NCBI RefSeq assembly: GCF_035594765.1
Contig: NC_085847.1
Coordinates: 5,704,001-5,768,000, forward strand
Source: Anolis carolinensis
Lineage: Eukaryota
DNA length: 64,000 nt
Reading direction: 5' to 3'
The first letter of the stretch is position 1, and the number at the start of each line of letters is the position of its first letter. The notes under the pieces were generated by a model that searched no databases, was not told the origin of the DNA, and saw only the letters and a program-made list of their open reading frames with translations. Positions 19,523-30,184 of this stretch are shown here, piece after piece. A program made the position numbers and the translations under genes.

Positions 19523-22202
19523 CAGAATATCCCATCATCCACTGGGATGAGCAATGAGCTACCATCACAACAGTATTATTATTATTATTATTGTTATTGT
19601 TATCATCATTAATATTAATATTTCTATGATTTGCAGGCATTACTCCCAGGATGGGGAAAGCAGCTGGTTCCGCTCGCTCTTTGTGCACAAGGTGGACCCT
19701 CGGAAGGACGCTCATTCCACCCTCTTGTCCAAAAAGGAAGCCAACCACCTCTATAAAATCCAATGCAAGTATCGGATTAATATTCAGATTCATTCCTAGC
19801 TTCACTCTTTGCGCTCATTCATCGCTCTTTCTCTCTGTTTCAGTCCACAATGTGAAGCCCGAATGCTTGGAAGCTTACAACAGCTTGGCGTAAGTCTCTC
19901 AATGCCCCTCCCTTCCCTAGAGGGGATGAGGGGGTGATGGGAGATGTAGTACTTCCTGCCTGCCTTCCTTCCGCAGGGAGGAAGTCCTTCCGAAATTGCA
20001 CTCGGATGCCAATTATCCTTGCGACTTGGTTGGGAACTGGAATACATGGTACGGCGAACAGGACCAGGCAGGTAAGGAAGAGGGACCATATAGCCCATCA
20101 TCCACTGAAATTAGCAATGAGCTACCATTGCAAACGTATTATTATTCTTTCTATTATTATATATTTATTATTGTGTATTTATTATTATGTATTTAATATT
20201 GTTATTATTATGATTGTTGTTACATTATTTTTATTATTAATATCATCATCATTATTATTTCCGCAGTTCACCTTTGGCGGTTTTCAGGTGGCTACCCAGC
20301 TCTGATGGATTCCATGAACAAGTTGAAACAGAACCAGGTCTTGGAATTAAGATGATTATTATTTCAATTAATTTAAATAATAATAATTTTATTATTATTA
20401 TGCAGTGCAATCATTATATTTATTATTATTATCATCATCATTTTATTATTTGTAGTATGCAATGTATTGTAGTCATTGTAAAAATAATTATTATTGTTGT
20501 AGTCATTATAATGTATTAATTACATTTCTTATTCTATTACATATATACATACATGCATATTTAACGGATTTTAAACACGTTTTATGTTTTATATTTTATA
20601 CTGTATTTAATTGGTTGTATTTTTTATATGTTGTTGTTTTTAATGATGTATCGGCATCGAATTGTTGCCAATTGTACGCCGCCCTGAGTCCCTCCGGGTG
20701 AGAAGGGCGGGATAGAAATATTTGAAATAATAAATAAATAAATAAATAAATAAATTTATGCTATGCTATATATACCGTATGATGATGCAACGTGTTTATT
20801 ATATTTATTAGTATATATGATGATTATTAAATTTGTTCAATGTATTATTATTATTATATAATATATATATTCTAGGAATATTTGGAATTCCGCAAGGAGA
20901 GGAGCAAGATGCTGCTTTCCCGGAGGAACCAGTTGCTGCTGGAGTTCAGTTTTTGGAACGAACCTCTGCCTCGTTCTGGGCCAAATATTTACGAATTGCG
21001 GACATATAACTTAAAAGTAAGCAAACATTGGATCAAAAATAGGATTGCAAAAATTACTAAAATCATAATGATTCCTCTGTGTTTTGCTTTCAGCCTGGGA
21101 CCATGATCGAATGGGGAAATAACTGGTAAGCAACACCCCCTCTCAAAAATATTATTATTGTTATTGCTATTATCCATTTTATTAGTTTTCATTGTTTTAT
21201 TTATTATTGTACATTTTTGTGTTTTCCTGCATGGAATCCTTTCTATTTCTTTGCTGCCCTCTTGCGGTTGCATCTGAGCCCATTTGCTAATCCTTTCTAA
21301 TCCCATTTCCCCATTTGTATCCCAAAACGGGGCAGAGTTTATACTTGAAAGACCCATATACATTTAAGTTGCGAAATAACGAATCTGTCTGCGCCATTAT
21401 GGCCCCGGTCCCGCAAACAAAGAAAGAAAGAAACCCATGTTACTCTCGCTCTTCTCTTTGCCTTGATTTCTGCAGGGCCCGGGCCATCAAGTACCGCCAG
21501 GAGAACCAGGAGGCCGTGGGGGGCTTCTTCTCCCAAATCGGGGAGCTCTACATCGTCCACCACTTGTGGGGTGAGCGGTCCCAGCATCCCCATGCCCGTA
21601 AGGCCCGAGGACTGGGATCTGGGTCTCGGGAGTCAAGGGGCTTCTCTCCTCCTCCCTCCCCTCTGCAGCTTATCGGGATTTGCAGTCGCGAGAGGAGACC
21701 CGGAACGCCGCCTGGAGGAAGCGCGGCTGGGATGAGAACGTCTACTACACAGGTCAGGCCTCCCGGCAGGCCACACCCCCTCCCTTAGGCCCCGCCCAGA
21801 CCGATCCTTTGAGACTTTAGTCCCGCCCCTCTCTGACTCCGCCCCTCCCCATCCCCTCCCTTAGACCCTGGGCCTACCCCTCCCTTTGGCTCCGCCCCTC
21901 CCTTAGGCCCCGCCCCCTTTCTGACCCTTAGAGATCTCGGTCCTTCCTTTGACTCCCTCCCCCCAGTCCTCTGTTTCTGAGCCCCGGCTTTCCCCACAGG
22001 CCCCCCACTCTGTCCTATTGACCCCTAACAACCCCCCCCCCCAGTGCTCAGGGCTGTCTCTGAACCCCTGACCCCGTGACCCCGGTCCAACCTCGTGACC
22101 CTCCCCCCCCCCCCCCCCAATGTGTCTGTGTGTGCAGTGCCTCTGGTCCGGAGCATGGAGTCCCGCATCATGATCCCCTTGAAGATCTCCCCGTTGCAGT
22201 GA
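17691..22202 (+). CDS. NIPSNAP1: Protein NipSnap homolog 1; exons 17691-17767, 19637-19764, 19844-19889, 19977-20071, 20267-20337, 20876-21016, 21094-21125, 21476-21570, 21669-21752, 22138-22202
   Basis: Mitochondrial presequence-like [15 protein letters not shown]; [26 protein letters not shown]; [17 protein letters not shown]; [19 protein letters not shown]; [15 protein letters not shown]. Confidence 0.97.
17800..18580. repeat. AT-rich degenerate satellite (aatatatttaggaat units) in NIPSNAP1 intron 1
   Basis: Dozens of short degenerate units plus a longer internal duplication (~18090-18230 vs ~18310-18440). Confidence 0.85.
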
Positions 22203-22682
22203 AGACCAAGAAGAGCAGCGAGCGAGGAAGAAGAAGAAGAAGACACCCTCCAAACCCTTCTCACGCACAAATATATGCATAGGGAGAGAGAAATATCTTT
22301 TTTGGGGCCCAGTTTTGGACCAAAACCCGGAGCAGGTTCCCTCCCGAGCCGGGAGAGGGCTGTGGTTGTTTTGCTGGGACCCGGTGCCTTGTCCTCCGCC
22401 CCCCTCCCTGGACATTCCCACCATCTCTTGAGACTGGGATGGAAAGTCTTGCAATACACTGAATGGTTTACGGAAAGACAAATGGTGTCGCCTTTGGTCT
22501 TTTTTTGGGGGGGGGGGATCTCCGTTGGCTCCTCTTTTCATGGGAAGAAGAAATCCCCAAGCTTGGCCCCACCCTCTTTCCCCTTGGCCTTGCCCCTGGG
22601 CTCTTTGCTCCTCCCCTTTCCCTGTGTTTGTATCAGTGCAGAACAAGAATGGACATGGTTTTAAAAATATTAGCACTATATG

Positions 22683-23003
22683 CAGTAGAGTCTCACTTCC
22701 AAGACTTGCTTATCCAAGGCTCTGGATTGGCCAAGGCATTTTTGTAGTCAGTGTTTTCAATATATTGTGATATTTTGGTGCTAAATTCATAAAGACAGTC
22801 ATTACTATGTAGCATTACTGCATATTGAACGACTTTTTCTGTCAAATTTGTTGTCTAACATGATGTTTTGGTGCTTAATTTGTAAAATCATAACCTAATT
22901 GGATGTTTAATAGGCTTTTCCTTAATCTCTCCTTATTATCCAATGTATTCACTTATCCAAGCTTCTGCCGGCCCGTTTACATTGCATAAGCGAGACTCTA
23001 CTG
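22683..23003. mobile_element. Tc1/mariner-type MITE (~300 bp), copy 1 of 6
   Basis: TIRs CAGTAGAGTCTCACTT...GAGACTCTACTG; other copies are flanked by TA. Confidence 0.85.
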
Positions 23004-23039
23004 TGTGTGTGTGTTTACATATGTTGAAAGGGTTGGAGG

Positions 23040-23535
23040 CAAGGAGCAAAGGGGCGTGGCTAAAGGCCAAGGGGCGTGAGGGAGGGCAGGGAGGGGCGTG
23101 TGGGGAGCGGCCAATGGGGGCCCTGGAGGCGTGTCCCGGCTGTGAGCTCACAATGGGCTGCTCTGCCTGAGCCGGGCTCCCCCAGCCTCTCCCGCTCAGT
23201 GGGTCCCAGGCTTTGGCTGCCAGAGGTTGGCTTTCCCGCCTGCCCGGGATGAGCCTCCGGCCCTGATCCACTCTTCTTCCAAGCGAGTGAGTGAGGCTGG
23301 GGGAGAAAGGGGGCGGGGCCTATAGAAAAGGGGCAGAGCCAAAAGAAGAAAGGCGGGCCCAAGAGAAAAACAGGCTCAAGGAGAAAGGGCGGGGCCGAGG
23401 GAGGAAAGGGGTGGGGCCAGAGCAGGGGGGCAAAACCAAGGGAAGGGAGGGGCCTAAAGAAAAGGACGGGGCGTGTCGAAGGGGCGGGGTCAAGATGAGA
23501 AGGGCGTGGCAGATGGAAAGGGGGCGGGGCTGAGG
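23040..23535 (+). promoter_or_regulatory. GC-box/CCAAT/TATA-like cluster upstream of the unrecognised gene; G4-prone G-run array
   Basis: CCAAT at 23111, TATAGAAA at 23321, several GGGCGG/GGGCGTG boxes, donor GA|GTGAGT at 23287. Confidence 0.5.
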
Positions 23536-24113
23536 GCCAGAAGGTCTCGGAGAAGCCAATCCCGACTTGGCGCTGCTTCTGCCTTGGCCAGGCCGTCCTG
23601 TGATGGAGATTCTGGGCGCCTTTGCCACCAACTCACCACTCGACGCCTCCGCCTCCTGCTGACGGGATTCTCCGCAGGACTTTGCGCTGCAGCACCATCG
23701 ATCGCCCAGACTTCCCGGCGAGGCCTTTCTTCTTCCTTCCGCCCGAGATCAAGCGGGATCCACTTCACCGACACCTGGTGGGACGAGGCCTCTCCTTGCC
23801 TCCTGGGGCCGGGGGGCGGGGCCTGTTTCTTGGGTGGAGTAGCCCTGTGGGTCAAGGCCGGGTGTGAACCCACGTAGGAAGAGAGGCAGGGAGCAAACGC
23901 CGTATCCCTTCTCAAATGTAGAATAATTACGGGAAATTCTGTCCACCAATTGTAATGGGGCAAATAGTCCAGGAGGGAAAGGTCGTGTCCAAGATGTGAC
24001 ATTCCGCCCGGAATACAAACAACACGATCAATTGGAGAAAGGCGAGACACGCAATGGAGAAAGGTCACGATTTCTCTCCCAGGTCACGATCAAAGGAGAC
24101 GACACCGACGGAA

Positions 24114-25464
24114 ATGCAAGACTCACGAGAAGAGGCCGAGCAGCTCAAGCAGCGGGAGGGGCAGCGGGCACGCAGCTACGGCTTGGGTAGGGCCCCCTTC
24201 CCCCCTCTTTGGGAGGGCCCTTTTGGGGTCCCTTCCCCGGCCAATGGCTTTGCCTTCCCTCCCGGCAGCCAAGCGGACCTGCTCCTGGCCTCTGGACCTG
24301 CGGGAGTGGACCACCGGCCACCTGAGCCCCAACCCGGCCAACATGCAAGAGCTCACCCCTCTGCCGCTGCCCAGGATCTTTGGCTCTTACCCGAGTCCGG
24401 TGGGTGCCTTGGCATTCGTCGTAATATCAATGTTACTGACATGTATGGATCTCACCCGTAAGTGCCAATCTGGGTGAGTCCCTTCTGGATCGCCAATTTG
24501 GGATGTCTTTTCACGTCCTGTAAATTCAGTCCATGTTTTGGATCTTGGTATAGGAATTCATATGAATCCATCATTGCTCTCTTTCAATTCAATCCATGTT
24601 ATTATTTATATTTCATAATGCATTATAATTATGATAATGTATTGGGTGAGTCCCTTCTAGGTCACCAGTTTCTTGCCGCCAAATTGACTGGAAATCAATC
24701 CCAGGCTGTTAAAAAATCAGAATTGATCGTTGGCCCCTCTCAAAAGTCCAGCTCGGCTCCCAAAAGGATAAAACCCAAAGTCGTGGTTTGTACCATCACC
24801 GTTAGTATACCACGCTCCCCATTTGGTCTCCTGGCGAGCCTTCCTCCCTTTGTCTCTGCAGGCCCAGAGGTACGCCTCCAGTTTGAACCTCTCCCAGCAG
24901 AGCCTCCTGCCTGTCAATCAAAAGAGGTAGGTCTGGGAGCCAGAGTCGCTCTCTCTCGGCCTCAAAGGGACCGGGAAGGGCCGGAAGGAGGCACAGCCTC
25001 TCGGCCTCTCATGGTGGTTCTCTCTCCGTAGCATGGTGGACCACCACCCCTTGATGCTCAACCCCGGGGGGCGTCACCCCTCGTTTCTGGGGTTCAACCC
25101 CCTCCACCGGACAAAGGACTTCCGTTTCACCAGGTAATATCGCCCCCCAATCCCATGACTTGGAGTGTAAATCATGGGATTGCCCCTTAGTCCAGTGTAG
25201 GCTCGGGAACGCTACCGTGAGCTGGGTCTGGAACTGGTTGAGGGACCCAACCGGACCCAAAGGATGCTTCCCACTTCATCCTGGAAAGAAGTGATTAAGA
25301 ATGGGGGGCTAATAATAATAATAATAATAATGGCAAGCTAATCACTCATCTTTGTTTCCAACGACAGGACGACGGTCACCCGCCCGGCCAGACCTCTGAC
25401 CCCCGAAGAGGACCCCAAGGGGATGGCCCCTCCCGGCCCTGACCCTCGACCTCCGGCCGCCTGA
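24114..25464 (+). CDS. Unrecognised spliced gene; best ORF 155 aa over exons 24083(ATG 24114)-24186, 24269-24399, 24862-24926, 25032-25133, 25368-25464; candidate upstream exons ~23120-23286 and 23678-23777; AATAAA 25484-25489
   Basis: Five exons with pyrimidine-tract/AG acceptors and GT donors join in phase (73+131+65+102+97=468 nt): MQDSREEAEQLKQREGQRARSYGLAKRTCSWPLDLREW...RHPSFLGFNPLHRTKDFRFTRTT...PRPPAA*; branch point GCTAAT; polyA signal followed by a U-rich element. Confidence 0.62.
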
Positions 25465-25600
25465 AGAGAAGCAAATCAAAGCCAATAAAAGTCCAATGCC
25501 AGAGACCGACTCCGGGCCTCAGCCGCGTTTTCTTTCTGTTCTCATGACATATTCATAGCAACCTTTAGAAAGGGGGCACACTCATTCCTGATGGCTCAAA

Positions 25601-27932: not shown

Positions 27933-30184
27933 ATGTCTTCAGACTCTGGGAAGAAGCGCAAGCCGAAGGTGATCCGGACGGAGGGCGTTGCTCCAGAAGG
28001 GAAGCGCAGCCGGGCGGAGGCCGAGCACAGCCAGGTGGGCTTGGGGGGCAGGCGAGCCCTTCCTCCGCCTGGGGAAAGCCGGACCAGAGGGGCCTTGGAA
28101 AACTAGACCTCTCTCATCCTCTCTGTGTTGGCAGGAGGGCCGGCCTTTGAGCGAGGAGGCGGAGGTGGAGCTGCGGGACCCCAGCAAGGACTTTGCCCTC
28201 TACCAGCGCACCTGCCAGGACCTCCAGCGCCTGATGCTCGAGATCCAGGAGCTGAAGAGCCGAGGCGGCCGGGACAGTGTACGTCCGGAGAGCCCCAGAG
28301 GCCATCCAGCCTACCCCCCCCCCCACGCGCGCACACACACACATATATCAGGGCTGTGTGAAATTGTCCTCACTCCTCGCAAGAAGGGAAAAAGTAGCTG
28401 GAGAAGGGGGAAAGTAGGCCCACTTTCAGAGCTGGAGAAGGGGGAAAGTAGATAGAATGTAGATATGTAATATAGATAAATAACTGTATAACATCCATGT
28501 TATATTATATAATATGTTATAGATGTAATANNNNNNNNNNNNNNNNNNNNNNNNNNNNNNNNNNNNNNNNNNNNNNNNNNNNNNNNNNNNNNNNNNNNNN
28601 NNNNNNNNNNNNNNNNNNNNNNNNNNNNNNNNNNNNNNNNNNNNNNNNNNNNNNNNNNNNNNNNNNNNNNNNNNNNGTCCATTCATGGCAATGTGTTCCA
28701 CAGGCGGCGGAGATTGAAGAGCGCCGGATCCAGAGCTGCGTCCATTTTATGACCCTGAAGAAGCTCAACCGTTTGGCTCACATTCGTCTGAAGAGCGGAC
28801 GGGACCAGACCCATGAGGTGCGTTTGTGGTGACTCACATTATTATTATTATTATTATTATTATTGTCTTCTTTTCTTCTTCTTATTATTATTATTATTAT
28901 TGCATTATTGCTATTTTATATTATTAATGTATTTTGTTACCGTTTCACATTATTCTTATGTAGTAATATTCCTATATTACAGTTTCATGATATTAATATA
29001 TTCAGTATTAATGTAGCATTATTGTTAATGTTGATTGTTGTTATTATCAGGGTGTTATCTAGTACTATTTCTGCCGTCCTGAATCTAAAAGTATATCTCA
29101 TTGCGTCTGTTATTATTATTATTCTTTCCAGGCCAAGCAGAAGGTGGATGCCTATCACTTGCAGCTCCAAAACCTTCTCTACGAAGTCATGCACCTCCAG
29201 AAGGAGATCACCAAATGCCTTGAATTCAAGTAGGAACCCTATGGGTGCTGGGGGGCTCTTTGAGGCTATTTAGACCCTGGATTGTTTGTGTTTGTAGGGT
29301 TTTTCTGAGCTATAGTTAGACCTTATGATATAGATGTGTGTGAGTGACTTGTTTCCTTGCTTGCTTTCTTGCTCCCAGGTCAAAGCACGAGGAGATTGAG
29401 CTGGTGGGGCTGGAGGCCTTCTACTCGGAGGCGCCCGAGGAGATCAGCCGGCCGGAGGTCACCCAAGAGGACCCCCACCAGCAGACCCTGGCCCGCCTGG
29501 ACTGGGAGCTGGAGCAGCGCAAACGGTATGAACCAAGGAAGGCAAGAAGGGCCTCTGCCGGGAGGGGTTGCAGGTTTCCTTCATGGTTGAAACAAGGGGG
29601 TGAATGGGACGGCCTTAGTGGACACTCGAGCTGAATAGATCTAGATCAAGAGCGAGATGTGAGAGAGGGATTGCCTGGTGCCTTCCTGCTTTGCACAGGA
29701 GGACCCTGTCTGATCTTTCCCGACAGAGGGCCACCCTTTGCCTCAAAGTCATGGAACCCGAGAGTCTTGACTAGCTTCCTCTGCATTCCCTCCTCCCGCC
29801 CTCCCTCCCTCCCTTCCCTCTTGTGTGTAGCCTGGCGGAGAAGTACAAGGAGGGCCTGTCCCAGAAGGAGACCATCCTGAAGGAGATCGAGGTCAAGAAG
29901 GAGTACCTCAGCAACCTCCAGCCCCGGCTCCACAGCATCATGCAGGTCGGCCATCAACAACATCGTGTCATCATTATCATTACGGTCACTAGCGTCCGAT
30001 GGTCATCATTGTGATAATAATAATTTGTTATATTTATTTATACCCCACAAAATAATAAGAACGACTCTGCTTTTCTTTTCCATAGCTTCACCATTGGTTC
30101 ATCCCATGGTTCAAATATTTAAATTTAAATTAAATTTGTTTAAATATTTGGCAGAATTTAATTGCTAAAATACCAAAGACAAAC

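What the first reader, a model, noticed from the sequence alone, without database searches (positions are those of the whole stretch)
23100..25540. Unrecognised multi-exon gene between NIPSNAP1 and THOC5
Seen: five phase-compatible exons give a 155-aa ORF (ATG 24114, stop 25464) with GC3-rich codons, a branch point, AATAAA plus a U-rich element, and an upstream GC-box/CCAAT/TATA cluster with two more candidate exons. Known: NIPSNAP1 and THOC5 are direct protein-coding neighbours in human. I recognise no domain in the Pro/Arg-rich product. The 5' exons hold only short uORFs (e.g. MGCSA* at 23153), and the best-looking frame in exon 23678-23777 differs from the downstream frame. Inference: a sauropsid gene lost in mammals, a young orphan, or a gene decaying from its 5' end.
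Basis: partly seen in the sequence, partly recalled or inferred. Interest (0 to 1): 0.8.

Follow-up and report, generated by a model that had tools for sequence, protein, structure and literature searches.

The report
Half-decayed lizard gene beside THOC5
The flagged gene is real and spliced, but it is the front-damaged copy of an uncharacterised gene found across lizards and snakes, and the same anole genome keeps an intact second copy elsewhere, possibly on the Y chromosome.

Summary
The five exons join into a 155-aa ORF. All four predicted junctions, plus two upstream ones, appear as GT..AG joints in contigs of three runs from three studies. The transcript has seven exons, 23106-25508.

It is not an orphan. 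It belongs to an unnamed family of about 270-aa "uncharacterized LOC" proteins found in geckos, skinks' kin, amphisbaenians, anguids, agamids and snakes. That gene sits directly upstream of THOC5 in Phrynocephalus and Rhineura, and downstream of NIPSNAP1 in a rattlesnake.

In this window the ancestral first coding exon (23592-23777) is wrecked. The ATG is kept, a TGA stands at codon 20, and frameshifts and a 63-nt loss follow. RNA contigs of four runs show the same sequence. Only the C-terminal 155 codons stay open, from a conserved internal Met.

An intact paralogue, LOC134292936 (244-261 aa), lies on a repeat-rich 1.3-Mb record of the same genome. Its promoter and exon 1 are 99.6% identical to the window's. 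The rest is 71-81% identical (dS 0.68).

Whether the remnant is translated, and whether the paralogue is Y-linked, stay open.

The parts
23020..23296 (+). Core promoter (GC boxes, CCAAT at 23111), the whole non-coding exon 1 and 10 nt of intron 1. This tract is 99.6% identical to the paralogue LOC134292936 (L012 23664-23940).
   Evidence: blastn; segment identities; both sequences read. Identity breaks sharply at both ends, which fits recent gene conversion between the two copies.
23106..23286 (+). Exon 1, non-coding, with uORFs of 18 and 5 codons.
   Evidence: The X7 contig starts at 23106 and is joined 23286/23592, GT..AG. uORFs listed.
23592..23777 (+). Exon 2, the relic of the family's first coding exon. 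The ancestral ATG is at 23603 and a TGA at 23660-23662 (codon 20). Relative to the paralogue it also has +3, -1, +11 and -63 nt.
   Evidence: DNA alignment A2 with the anole paralogue, Phrynocephalus, Rhineura and Crotalus; tblastn. Contigs of X1, X2, X7 and X13 cover it with no gap and differ only at 23630 and 23747.
24083..24186 (+). Exon 3. It holds the start of the surviving ORF (ATG 24114, G at -3). This Met aligns with an internal Met of the full-length paralogue.
   Evidence: Joint 23777/24083 in X2, X7 and X13; ORF; alignment.
24269..24399 (+). Exon 4 (coding). It ends with the conserved P-R-I-F-G motif.
   Evidence: Joints. 69% identical to residues 127-168 of P0108, E 1.3e-10.
24862..24926 (+). 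Exon 5 (coding), the same length as in the paralogue (65 nt).
25032..25133 (+). Exon 6 (coding). It carries the family's best-kept C-terminal motif, around PLMLNPGG.
25368..25508 (+). Exon 7. The stop codon is at 25462-25464 and AATAAA at 25484. Contigs end at 25493-25508.
22683..23004 (.). SINE-like dispersed repeat directly upstream of the promoter. It is context, not part of the gene.
   Evidence: Word depth in the millions in all four runs. Many copies in the window and in L012.

Best explanation
This is the ancestral-position copy of an unnamed, squamate-wide protein-coding gene. The normal gene has six coding exons and makes a protein of about 270 aa: three N-terminal helices followed by a disordered tail with short conserved motifs. 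It lies directly upstream of THOC5 on the same strand.

In the green anole this copy has lost the coding capacity of its first coding exon, through a nonsense codon at codon 20, frameshifts and a 63-nt deletion. The promoter, all splice sites and the last five coding exons are intact. It is therefore still transcribed and correctly spliced into a roughly 910-nt mRNA. The old start codon now heads a 19-codon uORF. The longest ORF (155 aa) starts at a conserved internal Met and encodes only the third helix plus the disordered tail.

Shown: the exon structure, the splicing, the lesions, the family membership, the synteny, and the existence of an intact paralogue (LOC134292936) whose promoter and exon 1 are 99.6% identical to this copy's.

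Inferred:
- The promoter identity reflects recent gene conversion.
- The window lies on the anole X and the paralogue may be its Y gametologue.
- I lean (about 55%) to the view that the 155-aa remnant is still translated at a low level, by leaky scanning or re-initiation past the uORFs, and keeps a motif-mediated part of the function. The alternative is a purely non-coding relic.
For: - Splicing: GT..AG joints in three studies.
- ORF and uORFs.
- Family: the exon-4 peptide hits P0108 at E 1.3e-10. P0108 is an A. carolinensis LOC protein. Twelve further squamate relatives match at E 1e-22 to 1e-60.
- Gene structure: the same six-coding-exon plan in L012-L015, with matching exon lengths 65, 102 and 97 nt.
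- Synteny: upstream of THOC5 in Phrynocephalus and Rhineura, and downstream of NIPSNAP1 in Crotalus.
- Lesions: alignment A2. RNA contigs of four runs show the same sequence.
- Sister copies: tree support 100/100, plus shared indels.
- Constraint on the remnant:
  - dN/dS is 0.24 against the paralogue.
  - A branch model gives omega 0.27 for the window branch, and omega = 1 is rejected at p = 0.025.
  - The coding exons show only three 3-nt indels in 468 nt. The relic exon and introns show 16 indel events, 8 of them frame-breaking.
  - The IFG and PLMLNPGG motifs are kept.
Against: - The remnant looks relaxed. It has lost 11 of 37 highly conserved columns against 6 for the paralogue, including Gly substitutions at two conserved positions of the third helix. 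Its tree branch is twice as long.
- Exon nucleotide identity to the paralogue (75-84%) is no higher than that of the alignable introns.
- The omega test is weak because outgroup dS is saturated.
- An open frame could survive about 50 neutral substitutions by chance about 24% of the time.
- Three uORFs lie upstream of splice junctions, which should depress translation and invite nonsense-mediated decay.
- There is no ribosome or peptide evidence.
- The tissue and sex of the runs are hidden.
Confidence: 0.8

Rival explanations
1. Transcribed pseudogene or non-coding RNA. Once the first coding exon died the whole gene lost its protein function. It is still made only because its promoter is intact and is refreshed by conversion from the working paralogue. 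The 155-codon frame has merely not been hit yet.
For: - Eight window-specific losses at conserved columns against three in the paralogue, and a branch twice as long.
- Exons are no better conserved than introns at the nucleotide level.
- The 5' leader is laden with uORFs.
- The chance of no stop after about 50 neutral changes is about 0.24, and the expected number of frame-breaking indels on this branch alone is only about 2.
- No protein from this locus is in the 15-billion-protein collection.
Against: - Omega is 0.27 on this branch, with neutrality rejected at p = 0.025.
- There is no frame-breaking indel in 468 coding nt, whereas the relic exon took two plus a 63-nt loss in 225 nt on the same branch.
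- All splice sites and the key tail motifs are intact.
Confidence: 0.4
2. An old sauropsid or tetrapod gene lost in mammals. On this view the family predates squamates and merely escaped my searches.
For: My searches have limited reach. The word-based search needs shared 5-mers. The exhaustive search was run with a 43-aa exon only. The tail is disordered and evolves fast.
Against: - All 13 relatives are squamates.
- No Pfam family, solved structure or Atlas cluster matches.
- Bird contigs have NIPSNAP1 and THOC5 906 bp apart and give no tblastn hit.
Confidence: 0.12
3. The gene is intact, and the stop and frameshifts in exon 2 are assembly errors.
For: None found. The region is GC-rich and next to a repeat, where assemblies can err.
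Against: Contigs from four runs of four studies cover 23592-23779 without gaps. They differ from the window only at 23630 and, in one run, at 23747. Neither difference touches the TGA or the indels.
Confidence: 0.02
4. A young de novo orphan gene.
For: No recognisable domain; a Pro/Arg-rich, GC3-rich product.
Against: Homologues with the same exon plan occur in at least nine other squamate genera and in the anole itself.
Confidence: 0.01

Closest known systems
LOC134292936 of Anolis carolinensis (XP_062814881-83; record CM069374.1 of GCA_035594765.1)
   Same: It is the sister copy (100/100 in the tree) and shares anole-specific indels. It has the same exon plan. Its promoter and exon 1 are 99.6% identical. 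The same Met, tail motifs and C-terminus (...DPRPPAA) are present.
   Different: It keeps the full 244-261-aa frame with the N-terminal helices. It lies among repeats, with 20-kb and 14.6-kb introns and a 42-bp satellite next door. It has no NIPSNAP1 or THOC5 beside it. Its GC3 is 0.61 against 0.83 in the window copy.
Unnamed squamate 'uncharacterized LOC' family (e.g. Rhineura LOC133373324, Hemicordylus LOC128338075, Phrynocephalus JRQ81_007577)
   Same: The same position upstream of THOC5, the same strand and the same intron positions. The C-terminal motifs are shared.
   Different: These genes encode about 270 aa, with an N-terminal domain that is highly conserved (dN/dS 0.09-0.25). The window copy cannot encode that domain.
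Anole X/Y gametologue pairs (RPL6, PPP1CC, DENR, SLC5A1, RTDR1, UBE2L3, EWSR1; Marin et al. 2017, PMC5741051)
   Same: The window is in the chicken-chromosome-15-like, X-linked part of the anole genome. It holds an old diverged pair (dS 0.68). By my own knowledge of amniote gene order, the pair lies near EWSR1, which has a 'more recent' Y copy.
   Different: Y-linkage of the partner is not shown here. In the seven published pairs the paper reports that X-gametologue function is generally preserved and that Y copies lost expression. Here the presumed X copy is the damaged one. This gene is not among the seven published Y genes.
Expressed unitary or duplicated pseudogenes whose old start codon survives as a uORF
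   Same: An intact promoter and intact splicing, a premature stop in the first coding exon, and a downstream ORF left open.
   Different: The remnant shows signs of purifying selection, and its promoter is kept identical to a working paralogue.

Membership tests
Squamate THOC5-upstream 'uncharacterized LOC' family (subtype A) | Significant sequence similarity to family members | tested here: met
   The exon-4 peptide matches P0108 at E 1.3e-10 against 1.84 billion proteins. tblastn of P0108/P0111/P0112 hits window exons 2, 3, 4, 5 and 6; exon 7 matches the paralogue by blastn and in the protein alignment.
Squamate THOC5-upstream 'uncharacterized LOC' family (subtype A) | Position directly upstream of THOC5 on the same strand, downstream of NIPSNAP1 | tested here: met
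   Window: NIPSNAP1 stop at 22202, gene at 23106-25508, THOC5 ATG at 27933. The same order holds in L013 and L014 and in L011.
Squamate THOC5-upstream 'uncharacterized LOC' family (subtype A) | Six coding exons with conserved lengths and phases | tested here: met
   Family exon lengths are 222-225 / 112 / 134-146 / 62-77 / 102-105 / 97-202 nt. Window lengths are 175 (relic) / 104 / 131 / 65 / 102 / 97 nt.
Squamate THOC5-upstream 'uncharacterized LOC' family (subtype A) | Open N-terminal helical domain with the invariant residues of alignment A1 (E46, N48, P49, C52, K58, R59, Q61, Y73-K75, K77) | tested here: not met
   There is a TGA at codon 20, frameshifts, and a 63-nt loss that removes most of this segment. 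The window copy is a member by descent, but it cannot make the full protein.
Squamate THOC5-upstream 'uncharacterized LOC' family (subtype A) | C-terminal motifs (P-K/R-I-F-G; VNQKS...PLMLNPGG) | tested here: met
   Both motifs are present. 26 of 37 highly conserved columns are kept.
Anole X/Y gametologue pair | One copy on the X | tested here: inconclusive
   Chicken NIPSNAP1 sits on a 12.70-Mb record, which is the size of chicken chromosome 15. Every chromosome-15 orthologue tested was X-specific in the anole (PMC4232536). Earlier scan notes call this piece the X. No sex-specific depth was measured here.
Anole X/Y gametologue pair | Partner copy present in males only | not testable with these tools
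No paper or note identified record CM069374.1. The small, repeat- and satellite-rich record with no neighbouring genes is suggestive only.
Anole X/Y gametologue pair | The copies diverged within the iguanian lineage and are old | tested here: met
   The copies are sisters at 100/100 and share indels absent from Phrynocephalus and Rhineura. dS is 0.68.
De novo / orphan gene | No homologue outside a narrow lineage | tested here: not met
   Relatives occur in Gekkota, Scincoidea, Lacertoidea, Anguimorpha, Iguania and Serpentes.

The most novel reading that the evidence does not exclude
The window copy is the X-linked gametologue and LOC134292936 is the Y-linked one. On this reading the usual direction of sex-chromosome decay is reversed. 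The Y keeps the full-length gene, while the X copy has lost its N-terminal domain, so females would have no full-length subtype-A protein. The two promoters and first exons are kept identical by X-Y gene conversion. That would point to a male-specific, probably spermatogenic, role for a squamate-only gene family. It would also add an eighth, previously missed, coding gene to the anole Y.
Probability: 0.45. Interest if true: 0.65.

Novelty: new member of a known kind. Interest (0 to 1): 0.42.

Why it matters
- It removes a candidate orphan gene and replaces it with a dated, explainable case: a lineage-restricted gene caught half-way through decay.
- The old start codon is fossilised as a uORF, and the splicing and promoter are still perfect.
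- It gives an unnamed squamate gene family a defined architecture and a conserved address next to THOC5.
- If the intact partner proves Y-linked, the pair would be an example of X-copy degeneration with Y retention and X-Y promoter conversion, in a reptile whose Y is thought to carry only about seven genes.

Tried and rejected
- Pfam on each exon peptide: nothing.
- Word-index protein search with the exon-4 open frame: blank, because only one 5-mer is shared even with the paralogue.
- Pfam on P0108 and on all 13 family members: only sub-threshold noise.
- Profile of alignment A1 against all PDB sequences: no hit up to E 10.
- AlphaFold2 model: pTM 0.21, three helices plus disorder.
- Foldseek against the PDB: nothing.
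- ESM Atlas: nothing by features, and TM 0.25 or below by structure.
- Identity of record CM069374.1: I looked in papers and in the scan's notes. I learned only that CM069372.1 is an anole record of at least 35 Mb, and that the anole X is 'chromosome 13' in older work. No supplements are held for Marin et al. 2017.
- Relics of NIPSNAP1 or THOC5 around the paralogue: tblastn and tblastx found only dispersed repeats.
- Logan contigs L001-L010: I first took them for close lizard relatives. They are bird contigs.
- Joined ORF: the joined 155-aa model was never sent to a search tool. It has no reference, so searches were made exon by exon. It was assembled only inside scripts, from window.fa, for translation, codon statistics and the tree.

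Full report
**Setting.** NF2 exons lie on the minus strand at about 13.7-16 kb. NIPSNAP1 runs on the plus strand and its stop codon is at 22200-22202. THOC5 starts at ATG 27933 on the plus strand. The finding lies in the 5.7 kb between NIPSNAP1 and THOC5.

**Observation.** The five exons have canonical GT/AG borders. Joined, they give a 155-aa ORF with GC3 0.82.

I laid the contigs of four public runs from four studies on 22300-25590.
- Runs X2, X7 and X13 carry GT..AG joints at 24186/24269, 24399/24862, 24926/25032 and 25133/25368.
- The same runs carry a joint at 23777/24083, and X7 carries one at 23286/23592.
- Lower-depth contigs retain introns, as pre-mRNA would.
- X1 holds one unspliced 2.5-kb contig.

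The runs are labelled RNA only by guess. However, exact GT..AG joints in runs of 50-180 million letters can hardly be anything but cDNA.

The transcript therefore has seven exons: 23106-23286, 23592-23777, 24083-24186, 24269-24399, 24862-24926, 25032-25133 and 25368 to about 25508. AATAAA lies at 25484. In the 910-nt model the 155-aa ORF starts at position 399, behind uORFs of 18, 5 and 19 codons.

**Identity.** Single exons hit no Pfam family, and a word-index search was blank.

An exhaustive phmmer search with the 43-aa exon-4 peptide found P0108 (255 aa, 69% identity over residues 127-168, E 1.3e-10). P0108 is 'uncharacterized protein LOC134292936 isoform X2' of Anolis carolinensis. It lies on record CM069374.1 (1.317 Mb) of assembly GCA_035594765.1.

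Using its isoform P0111 as query returned twelve more relatives, all from squamates and all unnamed: Rhineura, Hemicordylus (two genes), Phrynocephalus, Paroedura (two genes), Elgaria, Candoia, Heteronotia, Gekko, Micrurus and one transcript contig.

The alignment and the tree show two old subfamilies, A and B.

The gene lies directly upstream of THOC5, on the same strand, in Phrynocephalus and Rhineura. In a rattlesnake locus, homologous exons lie about 8 kb downstream of NIPSNAP1.

All mapped genes have six coding exons of matching lengths. Between species the N-terminal part has dN/dS of 0.09-0.25 and the rest 0.24-0.44. The family is therefore a real protein-coding gene.

I found no relative outside squamates.
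- Pfam, a PDB profile search, Foldseek and the ESM Atlas gave nothing.
- Nine bird contigs have the NIPSNAP1 stop and the THOC5 ATG 906 bp apart, with no family hit.

**What happened in this window.** Exon 2 (23592-23777) is the relic of the family's first coding exon. The alignment with the anole paralogue, Phrynocephalus, Rhineura and Crotalus shows these changes:
- the same ATG (23603);
- a 3-nt insertion;
- a TGA at codon 20 (23660-23662), where the others have Q, S, K or R;
- a 1-nt deletion;
- an 11-nt insertion;
- the loss of 63 nt.

The net change is -50 nt, so the old frame no longer connects with the downstream frame. The 19-codon uORF is the fossil of the original N-terminus.

Contigs of all four runs cover this exon without gaps. 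They differ only at 23630 and, in one run, at 23747. The lesions are therefore real and not assembly errors.

The surviving ORF begins at a Met that is internal in the full-length protein. An AlphaFold2 model of the full-length paralogue has helices at residues 23-47, 49-82 and 90-118 and a disordered second half. The remnant would thus encode the third helix plus the tail.

**Is the remnant still constrained?**

For constraint:
- dN/dS against the paralogue is 0.24 (dN 0.162, dS 0.681).
- In my own codon-model fit, omega on the window branch is 0.27, and omega = 1 is rejected at p = 0.025.
- The 468 coding nt differ from the paralogue by only three 3-nt indels. The relic exon and introns 1, 3, 5 and 6 show 16 indel events, eight of them frame-breaking.
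- The IFG and PLMLNPGG motifs are intact.

Against constraint:
- The window copy has lost 11 of 37 highly conserved columns, against 6 for the paralogue. Two of its losses are Gly replacements in the third helix.
- Its terminal branch is twice as long.
- Exon identity is no higher than that of the alignable introns.
- Outgroup dS is saturated, which weakens the branch test.
- A frame of this composition survives about 50 random substitutions 24% of the time.
- The uORFs should depress translation.

I lean slightly (about 55:45) towards a still-translated, relaxed remnant over a pure relic. Neither is shown.

**The second copy.** The two anole copies are sisters (100/100) and share indels that other squamates lack. 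The paralogue's exons are spread over 36 kb, with introns of 20 and 14.6 kb full of the same dispersed repeat. A 42-bp satellite of 128 units follows the gene. No relic of NIPSNAP1 or THOC5 lies within the 70 kb that I hold.

Most exons are 71-84% identical between the copies. In contrast, window 23020-23296 matches L012 23664-23940 at 99.6%. This tract covers the core promoter, all of exon 1 and 10 nt of intron 1. Identity stops abruptly at both ends. I read this as a recent gene-conversion tract, but a polishing artefact of the assembly is not excluded.

The window copy has GC3 of 0.83, against 0.60-0.67 in every relative. That fits GC-biased evolution at the ancestral locus.

**X and Y.** Chicken NIPSNAP1 lies on a 12.70-Mb record, which is the size of chicken chromosome 15. 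Chromosome 15 is the homologue of the anole X, and all its tested orthologues were X-specific in the anole (PMC4232536). Earlier notes of this scan also call this piece the X.

Marin et al. (PMC5741051) found seven coding Y genes. Among them is EWSR1Y, which has a 'more recent' X/Y split. By my own knowledge of amniote gene order, EWSR1 lies near THOC5 and NEFH. Transcripts without database matches were set aside as non-coding in that study.

A 1.3-Mb, repeat-rich chromosome-level record carrying an old diverged partner would fit a Y. I could not establish what CM069374.1 is. My single reads call was already spent, so sex-specific depth could not be checked. I give Y-linkage about even odds.

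**Verdict.**
- The gene is real and expressed. It is neither an orphan nor an intact gene. It is a 5'-decayed member of an annotated but unstudied squamate family, sitting at the family's ancestral address, with an intact sister copy elsewhere in the same genome.

**Limits.**
- The joined ORF was never sent to a search tool. Searches were made exon by exon, by reference.
- The exhaustive search used only one 43-aa exon.
- The tissue and sex of the runs are unknown.
- Stretches of N in the window were not touched.

Noticed in passing
window 22683-23004 (also 39699-40007, 41295-41621, 46693-47007, 61864-62177; at least 10 copies in L012): A dispersed SINE-like element of about 320 bp lies directly upstream of the promoter. 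RNA-contig word depth over it runs into the millions in all four runs.
   Followed up: partly
window 23287-23591 (intron 1): An intron packed with GGGCGG and GGGCGT boxes in an A/G-rich, loosely repeated context. TRF reports only a 20-bp unit with 2.2 copies. GC is 0.64 and CpG observed/expected 0.53 over 23000-23800.
   Followed up: partly
window 23630: All four runs read G where the window has A. This changes Asn to Asp in the fossil uORF, so the assembled individual differs from every RNA sample laid. Within the 155-aa ORF, 24315 and 24336 are synonymous variants (X13) and 25438 is Pro-to-Ser (X1, X2).
   Followed up: yes
L014 1-4969 and L015 456-7005: A phospholipase-A2-domain gene lies just upstream of the family gene in Rhineura and in Paroedura. 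The anole window has no room for it: only about 900 bp separate the NIPSNAP1 stop from exon 1.
   Followed up: no
L012 64814-70193: A 42-bp satellite of at least 128 copies, 95% alike, runs off the end of the locus beside the paralogue. It reads as a long acidic ORF on the minus strand.
   Followed up: partly
alignment A1; tree: The family has two old subfamilies. One has the N-terminus MEILGEFDNES... The other has METLDEFDNEY... plus a QGDMNY insert. Both occur in Hemicordylus and Paroedura, on the same chromosome. Only the first was found in iguanians.
   Followed up: partly
L002-L010 (bird contigs): The NIPSNAP1 stop and the THOC5 start codon are only 906 bp apart, so the two genes are nearly back-to-front in birds.
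   Followed up: yes
window 24114-25464 versus all relatives: GC3 is 0.83 here against 0.60-0.67 in the paralogue and four other squamates. This is a strong GC shift confined to the ancestral-locus copy.
   Followed up: partly
L012 24106-24127: A small alternative exon inside intron 1 of the paralogue supplies the METPRQI start of isoform X2. The window has no counterpart.
   Followed up: no
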